A DNA stretch of 64,000 bases. Source: Perna viridis. Lineage: Eukaryota. The translations under genes were made by a program, and so were the position numbers. This document shows positions 630 to 62,104 of the stretch, in pieces. The stretch covers positions 26,408,750-26,472,749 of the forward strand of contig CM074524.1 of the NCBI GenBank assembly GCA_037379345.1. Direction: 5' to 3'. Numbering within the stretch: position 1 is the stretch's first letter; each line of letters begins with the position of its first letter. The notes under the pieces were generated by a model. That model saw nothing but the letters and a program-made list of their open reading frames with translations, was not told the origin of the DNA and made no database searches.

Positions 630-874
630 AGAGTAATAAACGGAACACAGATTTGAGCAGAAATCCAAATAATATATTCCAAGGACAAAAGCTAGACAGA
701 GAAAACAAACACAACAGAACAACACAACAACGAACAAGAGATAACCAAAATAACAAGAACAAACTAAAGTAGAAGAGAAATCCAGACTCCATTAAAAAAC
801 TGGGACCATGAATCAGGTGCATCGGTAGGGTAAGCATCCTCTGCTTTTCTAGAAACATCGAGTTGTTCATAAAA
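630..874 (-). mobile_element. Family A PLE 3' UTR copy
   Basis: Diverged match to 1588-1830 (tttctagaaaagcagagga.gcttaccctaccg...attactctt). Confidence 0.8.
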
Positions 875-1587: not shown

Positions 1588-2400
1588 TCAAAGAGTAATC
1601 AAGGGAGCCAAGGTTATAGCGGTAATCAAAATAATGTAATCCAGGGACGAAGACTTGACATGGAAAACAGACAAACACAACAAAGAACATACAATAACTA
1701 AAATCATACATACAAAGTAACAAAAGCAAATGAGCAACTCGGACTCCACTAAAAACTGGGAGCATGGACCAGGTGCACCGGTAGGGTAAGCGTCCTCTGC
1801 TTTTCTAGAAACACCCGCCGAGTTGCTCATAAAAAGTCAAGTCCGGGGTAGACAAACGAGGAAAGGAAACACTATGACCCGTTGAACAAATCAGTTTTCA
1901 TGGTGTAGATAGATACACCATAACGATCCACGAGTTCATGATAGAACTTCTGTAGTGATGACTTCAACCTTGTAGCAACATGACCCTGTTCCAGAAGCCT
2001 ATTTGTTAGAGTTCTAGTGCGATACAAAAAGTCTGCGTAGTTTCGGCAAGCTCTGGCATAACGTGTACGTTGTGATATGAACACTCTATACGCAGGTGCT
2101 GAAGGGGTGTTGCCACAGATGAAAGGAAAGTTGACAACTCTGAATGAAAAGTCATCTCGTAAAGTTTGGTCAATAGTTTTCCTTTACCATCGATTTCTAA
2201 GTGTAGGTCAAGATAAGAGGCTGACTTCACAGTGTCTGTAGTATCCTTTATCTCAAGTTCTTTTTGGTAGATGCGAAGTATCAAATCCCCGAAATTAGGA
2301 TTGTTTAAAGATAATACGTCATCTATAGCGGAAACTGAGTTTGAAGGATCTAGCCAAACGATATTCTTCCTTTCTGATCAGATCAGTTATAAAGTCTATT
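1588..2400 (-). mobile_element. 5'-truncated Penelope-like element, Naiad-type (family A): RT C-terminal half plus 3' UTR
   Basis: Frameshifted RT: ...SFRY(I)DDVLSLNN...SASYLDLHLEID...DDFSFRVVNFPFICGNTPSAPAY...RYARAC...RLKSSLQKFY...NGS*. No GIY-YIG follows the RT, as in permuted-domain (Naiad) PLEs; ~280-nt 3' UTR ends CCCTTGATTACTCTTT. Confidence 0.85.
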
Positions 2401-2861
2401 TATGGTTATAAATGGTTGTACTCTTTGTTTTATTTTTTTTTTCAATTCACCATTCTGATTACGAAGGATATAAACAAAATCTGTGATGTATCGTAGCAGT
2501 GCGCCAGCTACGTAATATTCAGGTTCGATATTGGTTTATATGGAATACCTAGATGAATGAACATAAAACTCTCCGACATTCTGCATCATTAAGCTACAAA
2601 GTACTACATGTAGTTGGTCTTTCCCAATGTTGAAGTCAAAACACAATTTAAAGATCTCCAGGTCGAAGCTCTCTGTCAAATCATTCAAACTTAAGTCACA
2701 ATCATTGAAATAATGTATATCTGTAGATACAAGTCCCTCTCAATTAGCTACATTTCGAAGTTGATAAGCTATATAGTTTACGTCCTACAAGTAATCGCAG
2801 AGACACCTATGTGTCACGTACATGGGCTTAGTTTCTGGGCACCTAGTTCCAGAGACTCGTA

Positions 2862-2995
2862 CATTATCATAAACGCCAAAGTCTTTGAATAAAAGTTCAA
2901 CAATTATGTCTGCTGGAAACACTCGCCATTATCATAAACGCCAAAATCTTTGAATAAAAGTTCAACAATTATGTCTGCTGGAAACACTCGCCATT
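2862..2995. repeat. 65-bp tandem duplication
   Basis: Two nearly identical units starting at 2862 and 2927. Confidence 0.95.
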
Positions 2996-24767: not shown

Positions 24768-24952
24768 GACTTACCCTACCGTTGCTCCCAGTTTTTAGTA
24801 GGGCCTGAGTTTTTCATTTAATTTCATTACTTTGTATGTATTATTTTAGTTACTTTATGTTCTTTATTGTATTTTTTTTCCATGTCTGGTCTTTGTCCTT
24901 GGATTACATTCTTTTGTTTCAGCTAGAATCTTGGTGCCCTTGATTACCCTTC
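24768..24952 (+). mobile_element. Family A PLE 3' UTR copy (partial)
   Basis: cttaccctacc...gctcccagtttttagt...ttggtgcccttgattaccctt matches the family 3' end. Confidence 0.7.
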
Positions 24953-29934: not shown

Positions 29935-30210
29935 ATTTTCCTTTCCTCTTTTGTTTACCATGGACTTGACTTTCTATGAGCAACTGGGCAGGTGTTTCTA
30001 GAAAACACAGAGGATGCTTACCCTACCAATGCACATGGTCCATGCCCCCCAGTTTTTAGTTGTTCATTTACTTTTGTTCATTTGTATAAATTATTTTGGT
30101 TAGTTTATGTTTTTTCGTTGTTGTGTGTGTCATGTTTTCCCTGTCTGCTTTTTGTCCCTGGATTACACTCAATGATTTCCACCAGAATATTGGTTCCCTT
30201 GGTATAACTC
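29935..30210 (+). mobile_element. Family A PLE 3' UTR copy
   Basis: Matches the entire 3' UTR of 1588-1870 in the opposite orientation. Confidence 0.8.
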
Positions 30211-35366: not shown

Positions 35367-35835
35367 TTATGCTAGTGCTTGCTGTAACTACATGTACACA
35401 GGCTTTTTGTACCACATAAGACATCTTTCAATAAAGCTTCTGGAACAAAGTTATTTTGCTACAAATTTGATTTTATGGTCGTCATCATGAACTCGTGTAT
35501 TGTTACAGTGTATCCATCTGCACCATGAGAACTGATTTATTCAACTTGCCATAGTTTTCCTTTCCTCTTTTGTCTTTTCTGGTCTTGACTTTATATGAAC
35601 AACTTGTTGATTGTTTCTAGAAAAGCAGAGGACACTTACCCTACTGGTGTACCTGGTCAATTCTCCCAGATTTCAGTGGAGTCTGAGTTGCTCTTATACT
35701 TTGTGGTGCTTTGTATGTAGTGTTTTGGTTGTTTTATGTTCTTTGTTGTGTGTGTCTGTTCTCCATGTCTGGTTTTTGACCTTGAATTGCATTCTTTAGA
35801 TATCTGCTAAATCATGTTCCCATTGATTACTCTTA
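35367..35835 (+). mobile_element. Family A PLE copy: RT tail plus 3' UTR
   Basis: Decayed match to the RT end (aagcttctggaacaa...catgaactcgtg...actgatttattcaac...atag) followed by the family 3' UTR. Confidence 0.8.
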
Positions 35836-50749: not shown

Positions 50750-51815
50750 ATACTTAATACGTGTGTTTTTGCCCATTTGATAATAGCCGGATGTTAAGGA
50801 AAATTATTAGACCAGGGAAACAACTCGTTTTTCGGTTATCTACTCCGGGGCTGATAACCGTTTTATAGTTCCGGTTTTTGATCTGACATGCGCATATCCG
50901 ATATAAACAGCAGACGATAGATGAACAACAACGGAAGAACTGGGTGGATAGGATTGTTTCCTTTCCCTTACAGATGAAGCGTTTGTGAATGAAATGAAAA
51001 ATAACAACACTAGAAGGAAAACTATGATCGACAGGAAGATTTTGACAGACTGGTTAGAAAAACAACAGGAATTCCGCGCAGTCGAGGACATACCGACTCA
51101 AAGAACTTTACCACATTTTAGCCAAGTCTTTTTTATANNNNNNNNNNNNNNNNNNNNNNNNNNNNNNNNNNNNNNNNNNNNNNNNNNNNNNNNNNNNNNN
51201 NNNNNNNNNNNNNNNNNNNNNNNNNNNNNNNNNNNNNNNNNNNNNNNNNNNNNNNNNNNNNNNNNNNNNNNNNNNNNNNNAATATTGTACCAAGTTAATA
51301 TGCTCCAACAAATGTTCAAAATCCTCAACCGTTCCAAATATTACAGATAATGTCGTTTATGTACATAGTTTTTACATACATTGAGTTTGCACCTGACGAG
51401 GCGATTTTGCCTTATATGGCATTGTTCTTGGTGTAGTAAGGGGCTCTTTTTATGAAACTGAAAAAAAAAATCACAATACTAATGACAAAAATGTAATATC
51501 CACTAAGGGTCTGGAGTCCAAATTCACTATTTTATCAAATATTTCATTTCGAAATGTCACAAGTATAATTTACAGCTCTGATAAGTAACTAAATAACAAA
51601 TCAGAAGTGTTATCTTTGTATTTATTAATTTATCATATTCCATTTCTATTTAAAGCCAGAAATATGTGATAAATAGGTTATGACATGTCATTTGCCATAT
51701 CGCCCTGGTATGAGCACTCGACCCATATCAGCCCTCGACAGCGTCTCGGGCTTGATATCGGAGTCTCGTGCTGGTACCAGAACGCTATGGAAAATGCCAT
51801 GTAATAACCTGTAAA
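50750..51815 (+). mobile_element. Crypton-like (tyrosine recombinase DNA transposon) fragment spanning the gap
   Basis: FVNEMKNNNTRRKTMIDRKILTDWLEKQQEFRAVEDIPTQEL resembles the N-terminal part of Crypton/DUF3504-type proteins; long terminal hairpin at 51675-51810. Confidence 0.55.
51138..51280. other. Assembly gap
   Basis: Run of N. Confidence 1.
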
Positions 51816-59137: not shown

Positions 59138-59798
59138 ATGTACACTCACTGATAAAAAAAAAACAAACAAAAACAAAAACAAATAAAACAAATAAACAAA
59201 AAATAAACAAACATAATAAACAAAAAAAAAACAAACAGAAAAAAAAAAGAAAAAAAAAGAAAACACACAACAGACACCATAGTATGTGAATACTATAGGT
59301 GGGCTTTTAGTAAAAGTATTAAAGTCTTTAATAGTGATACATCGAAAAAGAAAATCTTAATTATGGAACAAGGGGAGATATGTGCGTACACAGTGTAGTG
59401 ATGTGTTTTGCTCATGGGCATATTCGAATATTGAACTTCTAGCTGCGTAAGTTAAATATTTCTTTGACACATGGATGGCGGAATTCGTCTTGACTAATTC
59501 ATTTATTTTTACAGTTACACTCGGCGCCAAATTGAAAATAAACCGGTTTATTATTCTCATGTTATACTCCTTGAAACATATTTACAGCATATTGAAATTT
59601 TCCATATCTATATGATTGGTATGTTTCAAGTTTGGTACATAAAATCTGAAAAAATGGAAAGTTAGGCGTCGGCTCGCCATGTAAATACATATAATGCTTT
59701 AAATTGTTTCATGTTTCGATCATTTCTTTATATATATTCTATATTGCATCTGTTCTACTGTAACGGGAAAAATGCATGTAAAACATGCTTCAACATGT

Positions 59799-59927
59799 CA
59801 ACTCGGCTGGTGTTTCTAGAAAAGCAGAGGACGCTTACCCTACCGGTGCACCTGATCCATGCTCACAGTTTTTAGTGGAGTCCGAGTTGCTCATTTACTA
59901 TAAACTTGGTTCCCTTGAATACTCTTC
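59799..59927 (+). mobile_element. Family A PLE minimal copy (structured domain joined to 3' terminus)
   Basis: Near-perfect structured motif, an internal deletion, then cttggttcccttgaatactctt. Confidence 0.8.
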
Positions 59928-61871
59928 AATAAATTACAAAACATAGGGTCTTTGACAAAATTGAGTTCTGAGGAACACATAATACAAGTCATGTACACAC
60001 ATTAGATTTTATAATGTACTAACCATTATCTCATTGCTTTATTTTAGTCTTTATTTTTGTCATATACATCAGCTTTTATAATCTCCTTAACATATTTCTA
60101 AATGTTTCCTTTAATTGATTTGAAAGAAAAAAACACTTCAATGAGAGAGAATTAGTTTAATTATTCTGAACGTCTTTTTAAATGCATTAGCATTGTACAT
60201 TATACATTAATAACTACTGAAAGAGCTCTATCAAGTTGTTTGAAAAGCTCAGGGAATATATGTATGTGGATAGTAATGAGATTTTATATTGTAACATATT
60301 TTGGACGGATTATATTTGCAACATTTGTACTTTACCACTTCATTTCTGAGTAAGAGTACTTGAAACCTCAATAATAAAACAACAGAAAATGCTGAAATCA
60401 CAAATAGTTTCCAATAAATTGCAATCGAAAAATAAAACATGTCACAATTTACATAACTTCGTAAAACTAAACAGATTTCCTTTGACTAATAATTTTGAAA
60501 ACATAAATATAAGCAATGTATAAAAATTAGTTCTCTAAATTAAGGATTTGCATTTATTCTTTTGATGCAGAATTATCTATTTCAGTTTTTTCCTTGTAAT
60601 TCCTTAGACAAGGTGACGTTTCTACTCTCGTAGAAATTTAACATTAGAGCCAAAGATAATTTTAAGCAAGGCAGAAAAAGTACGACACTGGACCAATAAA
60701 AGATAATACAGCAAAAGGAATAGATATTTCCACCAAAACGTTAGAATAACGTCTTCCGTTTATATTTTTTGTGTAAGTAATCCTATTTCTCAAGGATGAC
60801 TGACAACAACGAAGAACATATGAGTTGTTTGTTTTGTATATTACGCTTTCGTCAGGTATATTCACAAGAGGTTGTGTGTGTTATTTTTGTATAAATATCC
60901 TTAAAAAAAATACATGTATTTTTCCTTTCCCTTTTTGTTTTTGTTGTGCAATTTGTTACTAAAAGTAACAACTTTTTTCTTTTTTTTATTTTGGTTCAAG
61001 CAAGTAATATATTTTCAAAGAAAACAGACTAGAAAATATGTTGTCCTAGAAAGGTTCATGAAACTACTTTCTTGCTCTCCATAAGTATGATCAAACACAT
61101 TTATTTTTCACTTTGCAATGAAGAAATTTGGCTCATGGACTAAAGCTCATAAGCATGATAATCGCGTTACTATTTTAAAATTTTGAATACTCTTCAATTT
61201 TAGAGATACTTAATCAAATGATGTCATGCAGATCATATACTGTAATTTGATGGAAACAATATGTTTCAGAGTGAAAACCGTTGTGATGAAGAGATTTTCT
61301 AAAATTTGCTGTTATTAAGAATGCAAATAAAATCTAAATCTCACTGTGACATAACTAACTACTTGCTGTTCTAATTGTAACGGATGTGCATCAGAATAGA
61401 AACTTTTCAACAATAGCTCACTTAATTAACAATATCTAATTACAAGGAAAAGCACACCAATAGCTTTTAGAAAAAAAATAAAAAATACAAACATGCGGGA
61501 ATAGTTCTACTAACGAACTAATCATTTAAGAGGAATTACTGACTTCTTTAGACTTCATTTCACTTCATTCGACAGAGTGACTTGTATAAGAAAATACAAC
61601 AAAAACACAATGTCTTTGTATCACCAACCCATTGTTTACTCGAATATCAACTGTTTTTTTCATTATGTGATTATTAATAAGTTAATAATAATAATATATA
61701 TATCAATCTATCTTGCATCGATTCATCATGAACATATGACATTCAGTTCAGAGTCTGTCATAACGATGATAATGCAGTAGTCTTAACTAACACTTAATAC
61801 AACGAACCTACAAATAGAAAAATCAGATACCTATACATTAAAATGCAAACTTCATATACATATGTATGGGT

Positions 61872-62104
61872 GCAACTCGGCGGGTGTTTCAAGAAAAGCA
61901 GAGGACGCTTACCCTACCGGTGCACCTGGTCCATGCTCCCAGTTTTTAGTGGAGTCCGAGTTGCTCATTTGATTTTGATACTTTGTATGTATGATTTAAG
62001 TTACTTTATTTTCTTTGTTGTGTATGTTTTCCATGTCTGGTCTTTGTCTCTGGATTGCATTCTTTTGATTACCGCTATAACCTTGGTTCCATTGATTACT
62101 CTTT
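61872..62104 (+). mobile_element. Family A PLE 3' UTR copy
   Basis: High similarity to 1588-1827; explains ORF 61843..62106. Confidence 0.85.

What the first reader, a model, noticed from the sequence alone, without database searches (positions are those of the whole stretch)
1730..1830. Orphan multibranch RNA motif in the 3' UTR of a Naiad-type Penelope element: candidate undescribed ribozyme or processing signal
Seen: about 40 nt after the RT stop, the sense (minus) strand reads ATGAGCAACTCGG-C-GGGTG-TTTCTAGAAA-AGC(AGAGGAC)GCT-TACCC-TA-CCGG(TGCA)CCTGG-TCCATG-CTCC(11 nt)GGAG-T-CCGAGTTGCTCAT. A perfect 13-bp helix closes a junction with a GGGTG/TACCC branch (carrying two mini-hairpins) and two further hairpins. 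It occurs whole or in part in all 7 family copies. Established: PLE terminal repeats usually carry hammerhead ribozymes, but this UTR has no CUGANGA...GAAA core. Inference: the motif may replace the hammerhead functionally. The sibling family B has a twister-like motif in its 3' UTR, and I cannot map this fold onto hammerhead, HDV, twister, twister-sister, pistol or hatchet consensus.
Basis: partly seen in the sequence, partly recalled or inferred. Interest (0 to 1): 0.8.

Follow-up and report, generated by a model that had tools for sequence, protein, structure and literature searches.

The report
Conserved pseudoknotted RNA of Naiad retroelements
A folded RNA of about 100 bases sits just after the reverse-transcriptase gene of a very abundant Penelope-like (Naiad) jumping gene; compensating mutations keep it in many lineages, two stretches can pair only with a second copy of themselves, no described RNA family matches it, and it may be the cis signal that these hammerhead-less elements use.

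Summary
The sequence, its coordinates, the perfect 13-bp closing helix and the copies in the window are as described. The element is a Naiad-type Penelope-like element present in thousands of 5'-truncated copies. Copies within this genome are too alike to test a fold, so I fetched the 3' UTRs of related elements (57-92% RT identity) from other assemblies. On 31 sequences, 27 of 36 proposed pairs show compensatory changes (shuffles 14±2; slid controls 13 or fewer).

Three helices are supported:
- the outer stem,
- the 3' hairpin,

His "TTTCTAGAAA mini-hairpin" is a 10-nt palindrome that changes sequence but stays self-complementary, including its central bases, so it must pair with a second copy. 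NCCGGN' behaves the same way. GGGUG can pair with UACCC or with CACCUG; this is unresolved.

Nothing in Rfam 15 matches, and there is no hammerhead core and no SECIS. Catalysis is untested.

My best reading is a sense-strand cis element for copy-to-copy RNA pairing and RT recognition. A dimeric ribozyme is the main rival. The scan had already found this motif on other pieces of this genome.

The parts
1818..1830 (-). P1 5' arm (motif nt 1-13, AUGAGCAACUCGG)
   Evidence: It is perfectly complementary to 1730-1742. All 13 pairs show compensatory changes across lineages.
1812..1816 (-). Conserved GGGUG (nt 15-19), preceded by C14 at 1817
   Evidence: It is the same in all 31 aligned sequences, but the scan pattern fixed these letters. 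It can pair with UACCC (96.8% of cells paired) or, together with C14 and nt 20, with GCACCUG (97.2%). Which partner is used is unresolved.
1802..1811 (-). Pal1: 10-nt palindrome UUUCUAGAAA (nt 20-29)
   Evidence: Other lineages carry UUUCAUGAAA, UCUCUAGAGA, CCACUAGUGG, CCACAUGUGG, CCGUCGACGG, CCUUUAAAGG, UCCUGCAGGA, CCGCAUGCGG and UCACUAGUGA. Four of the 5 self-pairs show compensatory changes, including the central 23:26 and 24:25, which cannot pair within a hairpin.
1797..1801 (-). Conserved AGCAG (nt 30-34)
   Evidence: It is near-invariant across lineages. AGC could pair with GCU at 1789-1791, but that pairing shows no covariation.
1792..1795 (-). Pseudoknot helix E, 5' strand (GGAC, nt 36-39)
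   Evidence: It pairs with GUCC at 1766-1769. In other lineages the two strands read GAACU/AGUUC, UAGAC/GUCUA, AAGAC/GUCUU, GACAU/AUGUC, GAUCU/AGAUC, GAAAU/AUUUC and AUGAC/GUCAU. All 5 pairs are compensatory and 92.9% of cells are paired.
1784..1788 (-). Conserved UACCC (nt 43-47), candidate partner of GGGUG
   Evidence: These letters were left free in the scan pattern, yet they are conserved. Only G-C to G-U changes are seen.
1777..1782 (-). Pal2: 6-nt palindrome ACCGGU (nt 49-54)
   Evidence: The flanking pair co-varies: ACCGGU here, UCCGGA in most lineages, GCCGGC in L078 (UA 25, AU 1, GC 1). The CCGG core was fixed by the scan pattern.
1770..1776 (-). Conserved GCACCUG (nt 55-61), alternative partner of C-GGGUG-U
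   Evidence: Pair 20:56 of alignment A3 reads CG 13, UG 10, UA 5. L207 (AGGUG) fits this helix; L202 (CCAG) breaks one of its pairs.
1766..1769 (-). Pseudoknot helix E, 3' strand (GUCC, nt 62-65)
   Evidence: See the 5' strand at 1792-1795.
1743..1763 (-). P3: 3' hairpin (nt 68-88), G-CUCC / GGAG-U with an 11-nt U-rich loop
   Evidence: Four of its 5 pairs show compensatory changes (CUCC/GGAG, CCCC/GGGG, CCC/GGG, CACCUAU/AUAGGUG); 92.1% of cells are paired.
1730..1742 (-). P1 3' arm (nt 89-101)
   Evidence: See the P1 5' arm at 1818-1830.
1588..2396 (-). The 5'-truncated Naiad copy that carries the motif: an RT C-terminal remnant (stop at 1872-1874) and a 3' UTR ending in ...GATTACTCTT near 1588
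   Evidence: Thirty genomic copies share the same 3' end and have variable 5' ends. The C-terminus ...KTDLFNGS* matches longer copies.
61868..61968 (+). Second copy of the motif; its first 4-5 nt are replaced by flank (5' truncation)
   Evidence: (90.2 bits).
59795..59927 (+). A motif copy joined directly to the last ~25 nt of the element by an internal deletion of about 105 nt
   Evidence: None of 39 other scored genomic matches crosses the junction.
35595..35695 (+). Older, decayed copy
   Evidence: 55.3 bits.
773..870 (-). Old copy, about 75% identical; its outer stem has decayed
   Evidence: (45 bits).
29976..30067 (+). Decayed copy with a deletion in the 3' arm
   Evidence: (36.8 bits).
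24783..24951 (+). Copy truncated inside the motif (it starts near motif nt 67)

Best explanation
The motif is a selected structure of the sense-strand RNA of Naiad-type Penelope-like elements. It lies in the 3' UTR, which also serves as the upstream pseudo-LTR of tandem copies.

Shown:
- A long closing helix (P1), a 3' hairpin (P3) and a 4-5-bp pseudoknot helix (E) are kept by compensatory changes. Helix E joins the stretch after AGCAG to the stretch after CACCUG.
- About 30 core nucleotides (C-GGGUG, AGCAG, GCU, UACYC, CCGG, CACCUG) are kept in sequence.
- Two stretches are kept self-complementary while their sequence changes: Pal1 (10 nt) and Pal2 (NCCGGN').

Inferred:
- A sequence can pair with an identical copy of itself only if it is a palindrome. 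So Pal1 and Pal2 most likely join two copies of the motif. The two copies could be on two element RNAs (a dimer), or be the pLTR copy and the 3' UTR copy of one transcript (cyclisation).
- The conserved pseudoknot core is the part recognised by the element's telomerase-like RT.
- Holding two templates together at the RT-binding site would favour the template switch that produces the partial tandem (pLTR) and inverted insertions typical of these elements.
For: - Real and non-random.
- Host element: thousands of 5'-truncated copies with one fixed 3' end, an N-terminal GIY-YIG followed by an RT, and CxC and DKA motifs. These are the Naiad hallmarks of PMC8557442.
- Position: the motif sits 47-137 nt after the stop codon in every related lineage I fetched.
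- Covariation on 31 sequences (A3): 27 of 36 pairs have changes on both sides (shuffles 14.0±2.0, 0 of 500; slid controls 6-13), and 90.6% of cells are paired (35-50% when slid). By helix: P1 13 of 13, helix E 5 of 5, P3 4 of 5, Pal1 4 of 5.
- The central Pal1 pairs 23:26 and 24:25 form standard pairs in 29 and 25 of 31 sequences. A hairpin cannot make these pairs.
- Strand: in the co-varying helices G-U cells outnumber A-C cells 57 to 17. This points to the sense strand and to the RNA (or single-strand) level, not to duplex DNA.
- Two copies per transcript are possible: upstream pLTRs that contain the whole motif stand before full-length copies.
- Precedent: canonical PLE hammerheads carry a palindromic helix III/loop 3 and work only as dimers (PMC4209133).
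Against: - No experiment or read data shows dimers, RT binding or any other activity. Only assembled contigs were on hand.
- Most of the sampled sequences come from one other host assembly and are decayed copies, so independent lineages number about a dozen, not 31.
- The scan pattern fixed GGGTG, AGCAG, GC, CCGG and CCTG, so their invariance is partly ascertainment.
- The partner of GGGUG is unresolved.
- The motif lies about 142 nt from the 3' end, further than the RT-recognition stem-loops of stringent LINEs.
- About 30 conserved nucleotides is more than a simple protein-binding or dimerisation site needs.
Confidence: 0.5

Rival explanations
1. The motif is a new self-cleaving ribozyme that is active as a dimer or in tandem transcripts. 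It would take the place of the dimeric minimal hammerheads that other PLE clades carry in their pLTRs.
For: - It sits at the same spot (3' UTR/pLTR) as the PLE hammerheads, and Naiads lack canonical hammerheads (PMC8557442).
- Its make-up is typical of small ribozymes: a compact pseudoknotted fold with about 30 conserved nucleotides between co-varying helices.
- Its palindromes parallel the palindromic helix III/loop 3 of dimeric PLE hammerheads (PMC4209133).
- No known ribozyme model matches it, so it would be a new class.
Against: - There is no evidence of cleavage.
- Inserted copies all end at a fixed terminus about 142 nt downstream, and their 5' ends are scattered, so the motif does not set the ends of the copied RNA.
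- Conserved structured RNAs in retroelement UTRs are far more often binding sites than catalysts.
Confidence: 0.2
2. The motif is a cis signal for RT recognition or ribonucleoprotein assembly only. The palindromes would be small internal hairpins or protein contacts, and no RNA-RNA pairing between copies takes place.
For: - It is a conserved 3' UTR structure in a retroelement that copies by target-primed reverse transcription.
- PLE RTs are the closest relatives of telomerase RTs, which bind a pseudoknotted RNA (PMC8557442; the telomerase RNA point is from general knowledge).
- The outer three pairs of Pal1 could form a 3-bp hairpin with a tetraloop.
Against: - The four central bases of Pal1 are themselves palindromic in nearly every lineage (CUAG, CAUG, UCGA, UUAA, UGCA); pairs 23:26 and 24:25 co-vary. 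A tetraloop would not require that.
- The flanking pair of Pal2 also co-varies.
Confidence: 0.2
3. The motif is a translational or mRNA-level signal: a SECIS element as in clam and spider Naiads, a readthrough or frameshift stimulator, a stability or export element, or a small ORF that starts at the motif's AUG.
For: - Some Naiad families carry a SECIS 1-21 nt after the stop codon (PMC8557442).
- The window copy starts with AUGA, and an 80-aa ORF runs from that AUG to the end of the element.
- The conserved nucleotides translate to a similar peptide in several lineages.
Against: - No SECIS model matches.
- AUGA is Watson-Crick paired here and is absent in other lineages.
- Many copies have long open frames without an in-frame UGA.
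- The motif starts 41-137 nt after the stop, too far for a readthrough pseudoknot.
- The largest foreign family has an in-frame stop just upstream, no AUG, and a stop in the P3 loop.
- The variable core positions fall on codon positions 1, 1, 1, 1, 2, 3, 3 and 3, which is not a third-position pattern (my reading).
- Helix covariation is not a coding signature.
Confidence: 0.05
4. The motif is a DNA-level feature or no feature at all: a captured MITE with 13-bp terminal inverted repeats, a promoter palindrome of the pLTR, or a chance inverted repeat spread by a young family.
For: - It has 13-bp perfect terminal inverted repeats.
- All copies in this genome are 93-100% alike, so copy number alone proves nothing.
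- pLTRs of PLEs hold promoters (PMC8557442).
Against: - The motif is found at the same place in RT lineages 57-92% identical to this one. The arms have entirely different sequences there but still pair.
- G-U cells far outnumber A-C cells.
- The only stand-alone copy is a unique deletion derivative.
- A protein-binding DNA palindrome would keep its sequence, not only its symmetry.
Confidence: 0.03

Closest known systems
Minimal and type-I hammerhead ribozymes in the pLTRs of canonical Penelope-like elements (Cervera & de la Pena 2014, PMC4209133)
   Same: - Same element superfamily and same location (3' UTR/pLTR).
- Both have helices that co-vary within and between genomes.
- Both carry a palindromic segment that lets two copies pair.
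   Different: - The Naiad motif has no CUGANGA/GAAA core and no three-helix junction around one (Rfam).
- It has a pseudoknot, two palindromes and a different set of conserved nucleotides.
- No cleavage has been shown.
Dimerisation initiation sites of retroviruses and PAL sequences of Ty1 (general knowledge)
   Same: In both, short palindromes change in sequence but stay self-complementary, which lets two copies of a retroelement RNA pair.
   Different: - Those sites lie in 5' leaders of LTR elements that package two genomes.
- This motif lies in the 3' UTR of a non-LTR-type, telomerase-related element.
- It has two palindromes set in a pseudoknot, and no dimer has been observed.
3' UTR structures recognised by the RT of non-LTR retrotransposons (stringent LINE stem-loops, the R2 3' UTR) and the pseudoknot domain of telomerase RNA (general knowledge; PMC5135761 for the LINE stem-loop idea)
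   Same: All are conserved folded RNAs in cis to an RT that starts copying at the 3' end. PLE RTs are sister to TERT (PMC8557442).
   Different: - There is no sequence or model similarity.
- This motif is about 142 nt from the 3' end.
- Binding was not tested.
SECIS elements of selenoprotein-encoding Naiads (PMC8557442)
   Same: Same clade of elements; both are structured RNAs shortly after the stop codon.
   Different: - There is no AUGA...AA...GA kink-turn core.
- No Rfam SECIS model matches.
- There is no conserved in-frame UGA in this family.

Membership tests
Naiad clade of Penelope-like elements (host element) | GIY-YIG endonuclease placed N-terminal to the RT | tested here: met
   PF01541 matches at residues 155-241 of an upstream ORF piece (E 8.5e-4, just under Pfam's cut-off). 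PF00078 matches in the downstream piece (E 2.7e-6, just under the cut-off). The order is seen on L031 and L067.
Naiad clade of Penelope-like elements (host element) | CxC motif in the linker, and DKA in place of DKG (PMC8557442) | tested here: met
   'PPDCSCKT' is seen in the L067 translation and 'VPADKAQNN' in L031.
Naiad clade of Penelope-like elements (host element) | pLTR/partial tandem and inverted arrangements; 5' truncation; no canonical hammerhead | tested here: met
   - An upstream partial tail abuts the 5' end in L066-L074.
- Tandem arrays are seen.
- An inverted pair is seen in L201.
- 5' ends are variable.
- There is no CUGANGA.
Hammerhead ribozyme (including PLE min-HHR) | Conserved core CUGANGA ... 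GAAA ... UH around a three-helix junction | tested here: not met
   There is no CTGANGA on either strand of the 359-nt tail, nor in 400 nt after the stop codon of 7 other lineages. No Rfam hammerhead match at E<=10.
HDV-like, twister, twister-sister, pistol, hatchet, hairpin and VS ribozymes | A match to the family covariance model (sequence plus structure) | tested here: not met
   Rfam 15 returns no match for any of them in the window at the gathering score, in four genomic loci at E<=1, in 1 kb of L067 at E<=10, or in six foreign loci at E<=1. From the strand order (inference), the motif lacks the P3 and P4 hairpins that an HDV-like fold needs between its crossing helices.
Eukaryotic SECIS element | AUGA/GA non-Watson-Crick quartet, apical AA, and in-frame UGA codons in the ORF | tested here: not met
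   AUGA here is Watson-Crick paired to UCAU and is absent in other lineages. No SECIS model matches. Many ORF copies have no internal stop.
Self-cleaving ribozyme (any class) | Site-specific self-cleavage of the transcript | not testable with these tools
   Only assembled contigs of public runs were on hand; they cannot show RNA ends.
RNA dimerisation / copy-to-copy pairing signal | A self-complementary segment that is kept while its sequence changes | tested here: met
   Pal1 has 4 of 5 pairs with compensatory changes and at least 10 distinct palindromes. Pal2 occurs as ACCGGU, UCCGGA and GCCGGC.
RNA dimerisation / copy-to-copy pairing signal | Observed dimer or 5'-3' contact of the RNA | not testable with these tools
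   Energy-based co-folding is not informative, because any hairpin can swap strands in such a calculation.
MITE | Independent stand-alone copies bounded by the inverted repeats and by target-site duplications | tested here: not met
   Copies are always embedded in the Naiad tail. The one short copy is a unique deletion derivative.

The most novel reading that the evidence does not exclude
The motif is a new class of self-cleaving ribozyme that works only when two copies pair through its palindromes. It would be the Naiad counterpart of the dimeric hammerheads of other Penelope-like elements, and would be present in tens of thousands of copies in invertebrate genomes.
Probability: 0.18. Interest if true: 0.92.

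Novelty: new variant of a known kind. Interest (0 to 1): 0.72.

Why it matters
Naiads are among the most abundant retroelements of many invertebrates. They are also the one large EN+ PLE clade without hammerhead ribozymes; Craig et al. 2021 (PMC8557442) noted this and left open what, if anything, takes the hammerhead's place.

Three things now exist that allow direct tests:
- a covariation-supported model of the motif,
- a calibrated covariance model (R1),
- specific mutants implied by the model (helix E, Pal1, Pal2).

With these one can test whether these telomerase-related RTs recognise a pseudoknotted RNA, and whether PLE RNAs pair with each other. If they do pair, that would explain the odd tandem and inverted insertions of the whole PLE group. 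One can also test whether a new ribozyme class is hidden here.

The motif is also a practical marker for annotating Naiad tails, and for telling them apart from host 3' UTRs in mollusc-type genomes.

Tried and rejected
- **Covariation within this genome:** 53 near-full copies are 93-100% identical, so they carry no information about pairing.
- **RNAalifold on a sequence-based alignment:** it found only the invariant CGGGU/ACCUG pairs, because MAFFT does not put co-varying arms in register. I replaced it with an end-anchored alignment (A3).
- **Ungapped best-stem search with G-U allowed:** too noisy (null mean 9 of 12).
- **More genomic DNA:** I therefore could not take an unbiased sample of 5' truncation points or look at the most complete copies.
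- **Public runs:** all 23 are Logan contigs of coded organism A, and none is on record as RNA. Laying four of them shows presence only, with no RNA ends. The tool itself says the depth gradient across the motif is not to be used.
- **Co-folding two copies:** a dimer is always favoured by trivial strand swapping, so I did not use it as evidence.
- **SINE-like 'motif plus 3' end' family:** the short copy at 59795-59927 is unique.
- **Small-ORF reading and SECIS reading:** rejected.
- **Three look-ups of foreign contigs returned no DNA and one found no record**.
- **SINE central domains of molluscs (PMC4758252):** the paper's text holds no sequence to compare, so this is left open.
- **Literature searches:** they found no description of this motif, but the library covers open-access papers only.

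Full report
**1. The observation**

- The two 13-nt ends are perfectly complementary.
- The 101-nt stretch folds at -39.3 kcal/mol against -28.2±3.4 for dinucleotide shuffles (z -3.3). With flanks the z-score is only -1.4.
- The 13-mer occurs 7 times in the window against 0.5 expected.
- BLAST and a covariance model find six full or near-full copies and one partial copy.
- The RT remnant ends with a stop at 1872-1874, 41 nt before the motif.
- No CUGANGA is present on either strand of the tail.

**2. The host element**

The 359-nt tail has more than 5,000 first-look candidates in the 723-Mb assembly, and all 40 scored are 94-100% identical.
- Copies share one 3' end (...GATTACTCTT) and have variable 5' ends. 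This is the pattern of target-primed reverse transcription with 5' truncation.
- Longer copies encode an N-terminal GIY-YIG domain, then a CxC motif, a DKA motif and an RT. These are the hallmarks of the Naiad clade as defined by Craig et al. 2021 (PMC8557442).
- Full-length copies are preceded by a partial upstream tail (pLTR) that often holds the whole motif. Tandem arrays also occur.
- Craig et al. state that Naiads lack canonical hammerheads, and that some clam and spider Naiads carry a SECIS right after the stop.
- In this family many ORF copies have no internal stop, so it is not a selenoprotein family.

**3. Known RNA families**

Rfam 15 gives nothing:
- for the window at gathering scores,
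- for four genomic loci at E<=1,
- for 1 kb around a pLTR copy at E<=10,
- for six foreign loci at E<=1, apart from spurious miRNA-type hits on inverted repeats.

**4. Comparative test**

Copies in this genome are 93-100% alike and cannot test a fold. I gathered other lineages in three ways.
- I searched the RT C-terminal piece against the protein collection (4,538 relatives) and fetched the encoding contigs.
- I scanned metagenome contigs with a 20-base skeleton of the core.
- I ran a covariance model built here (R1) over the fetched loci. It gave 184 hits.

The motif stands 47-137 nt after the stop codon in every lineage.

I aligned 31 sequences anchored at both ends (A3) and counted pairs.
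- 27 of 36 pairs have changes on both sides. Shuffles give 14.0±2.0 (0 of 500 reach 27), and slid controls give 6-13.
- 90.6% of cells are paired, against 35-50% when slid.
- Outer stem P1: 13 of 13 pairs are compensatory. For example AUGAGCAACUCGG/CCGAGUUGCUCAU here becomes AUGGCCAUCAUGG/CCAUGAUGGCCAU in L078.
- 3' hairpin P3: 4 of 5 pairs.
The five bases after AGCAG pair with the five bases after CACCUG. The strand pairs seen are GGAC/GUCC, GAACU/AGUUC, UAGAC/GUCUA, AAGAC/GUCUU, GACAU/AUGUC, GAUCU/AGAUC, GAAAU/AUUUC and AUGAC/GUCAU.

Helix E crosses either candidate pairing of GGGUG, so the fold is a pseudoknot.

In the co-varying helices, G-U cells outnumber A-C cells 57 to 17. The structure therefore belongs to the sense strand and acts at the RNA level.

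**5. The palindromes**

- Its sequence differs between lineages: UUUCAUGAAA, UCUCUAGAGA, CCACUAGUGG, CCACAUGUGG, CCGUCGACGG, CCUUUAAAGG, UCCUGCAGGA, CCGCAUGCGG, UCACUAGUGA. Two copies in L201 keep pairing through G-U.
- It stays self-complementary throughout.
- Four of its five self-pairs show compensatory changes. These include 23:26 (paired in 29 of 31 sequences) and 24:25 (25 of 31), which no hairpin can form.

A second, 6-nt palindrome, Pal2, changes its flanks in step: ACCGGU, UCCGGA, GCCGGC.

Identical sequences can pair with each other only if they are palindromes. I therefore infer that Pal1 and Pal2 join two copies of the motif. The copies could be on two RNAs, or be the pLTR copy and the 3' UTR copy of one transcript. 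This step is inference; no dimer was observed.

**6. What stays open in the fold**

GGGUG can pair with UACYC (96.8% of cells, only G-C to G-U changes). Together with C14 and nt 20, it can also pair with (G/A)CACCUG (97.2%; the end pair reads CG 13, UG 10, UA 5).
- Two single lineages disagree. L207 has AGGUG, which fits the second pairing and breaks the first. L202 has CCAG, which does the opposite.
- GGGTG, AGCAG, GC, CCGG and CCTG were fixed by my scan pattern, so their invariance is partly ascertainment. UACCC and the CA of CACCUG were free and are conserved.
- His CCGG(UGCA)CCUGG hairpin has no support.

**7. Alternatives considered**

- *SECIS:* rejected (no core, no model match, no in-frame UGA).
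- *Small ORF from the motif's AUG* (80 aa here): the frame has no AUG and has in-frame stops in the largest foreign family. Variable core positions are not third-codon positions. Helix covariation is not a coding signature.
- *MITE or DNA palindrome:* rejected. The motif holds its place across RT lineages, G-U cells are in excess, and the only short copy is unique.
- *Ribozyme:* neither supported nor excluded. For it: the location, the compact pseudoknot, about 30 conserved nucleotides, and the parallel with PLE hammerheads, which have a palindromic helix III and act as dimers (PMC4209133). Against it: inserted copies end 142 nt downstream at a fixed terminus and have scattered 5' ends, so cleavage at the motif does not define the copied RNA.
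- *Public runs:* only contigs were on hand, and they cannot show RNA ends.

**8. Verdict**

This is a real, selected, undescribed RNA module of Naiad elements.

Most likely it is a cis element that pairs two copies and is recognised by the RT (0.5). Next come a dimeric ribozyme (0.2) and RT recognition without pairing (0.2).

Other agents of this scan reached the same motif from other pieces of this genome.

I built no consensus of the element and I name no copy as intact.

Noticed in passing
L067:975-1045 (same in L068, L069, L074): At the junction of the upstream pLTR and the 5' end of the full-length element (...GATTACTCTT | TCACACCACTGGGTCGATACC...), the first ~60 nt hold nested inverted repeats: ACTGGGT...ACCCAGT, GATACC...GGTATC and CCAC...GTGG. 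This could be a second structured RNA at the 5' end. Rfam gave nothing there.
   Followed up: partly
L067-L069, L074 (G000:C6:47136027-47152299): Four copies are spaced about 5.1 kb apart in tandem. In them one open frame of 628 aa runs from inside the pLTR copy of the motif, across the 5' end, into the GIY-YIG ORF. This is probably chance in a T-rich stretch, because the frame differs from that of the window copy.
   Followed up: partly
G000:C3:46044168-46061313: Six model hits stand at an exact 3,409-bp period, with another hit 10,227 bp (three periods) upstream at 46033941. This is a tandem array of whole elements.
   Followed up: no
L201:825-2934: Two copies of the RT C-terminus plus 3' UTR face each other tail to tail. 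Their Pal1 differs by single C-to-U changes that keep G-U pairing (UCGUCGAUGA and UCGUUGACGA). The inverted pair gives a spurious MIR2630 hit in Rfam.
   Followed up: partly
window 1784-1790 (minus strand): The conserved UUACCCUA holds ACCCUA, which is one unit of the C-strand of a TTAGGG telomere repeat. Another reader of this scan flagged the likeness. Other lineages read ACCCUU or ACUCUU, so the likeness is not kept.
   Followed up: partly
window 1588-1620 (minus strand); L079, L203: The last ~30 nt of the element are similar between distant lineages (...CCUUGG...ACUCUU here...CCCUUGGUAUCUUCAAACUCUUCUUAU in the foreign family). This may be the actual priming site.
   Followed up: no
window 2855-2995: A 76-bp direct duplication, 96% identical, offset by 65 bp, lies just upstream of the truncated copy.
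   Followed up: no
window 51138-51280: A run of 143 N (an assembly gap or masked stretch).
   Followed up: no
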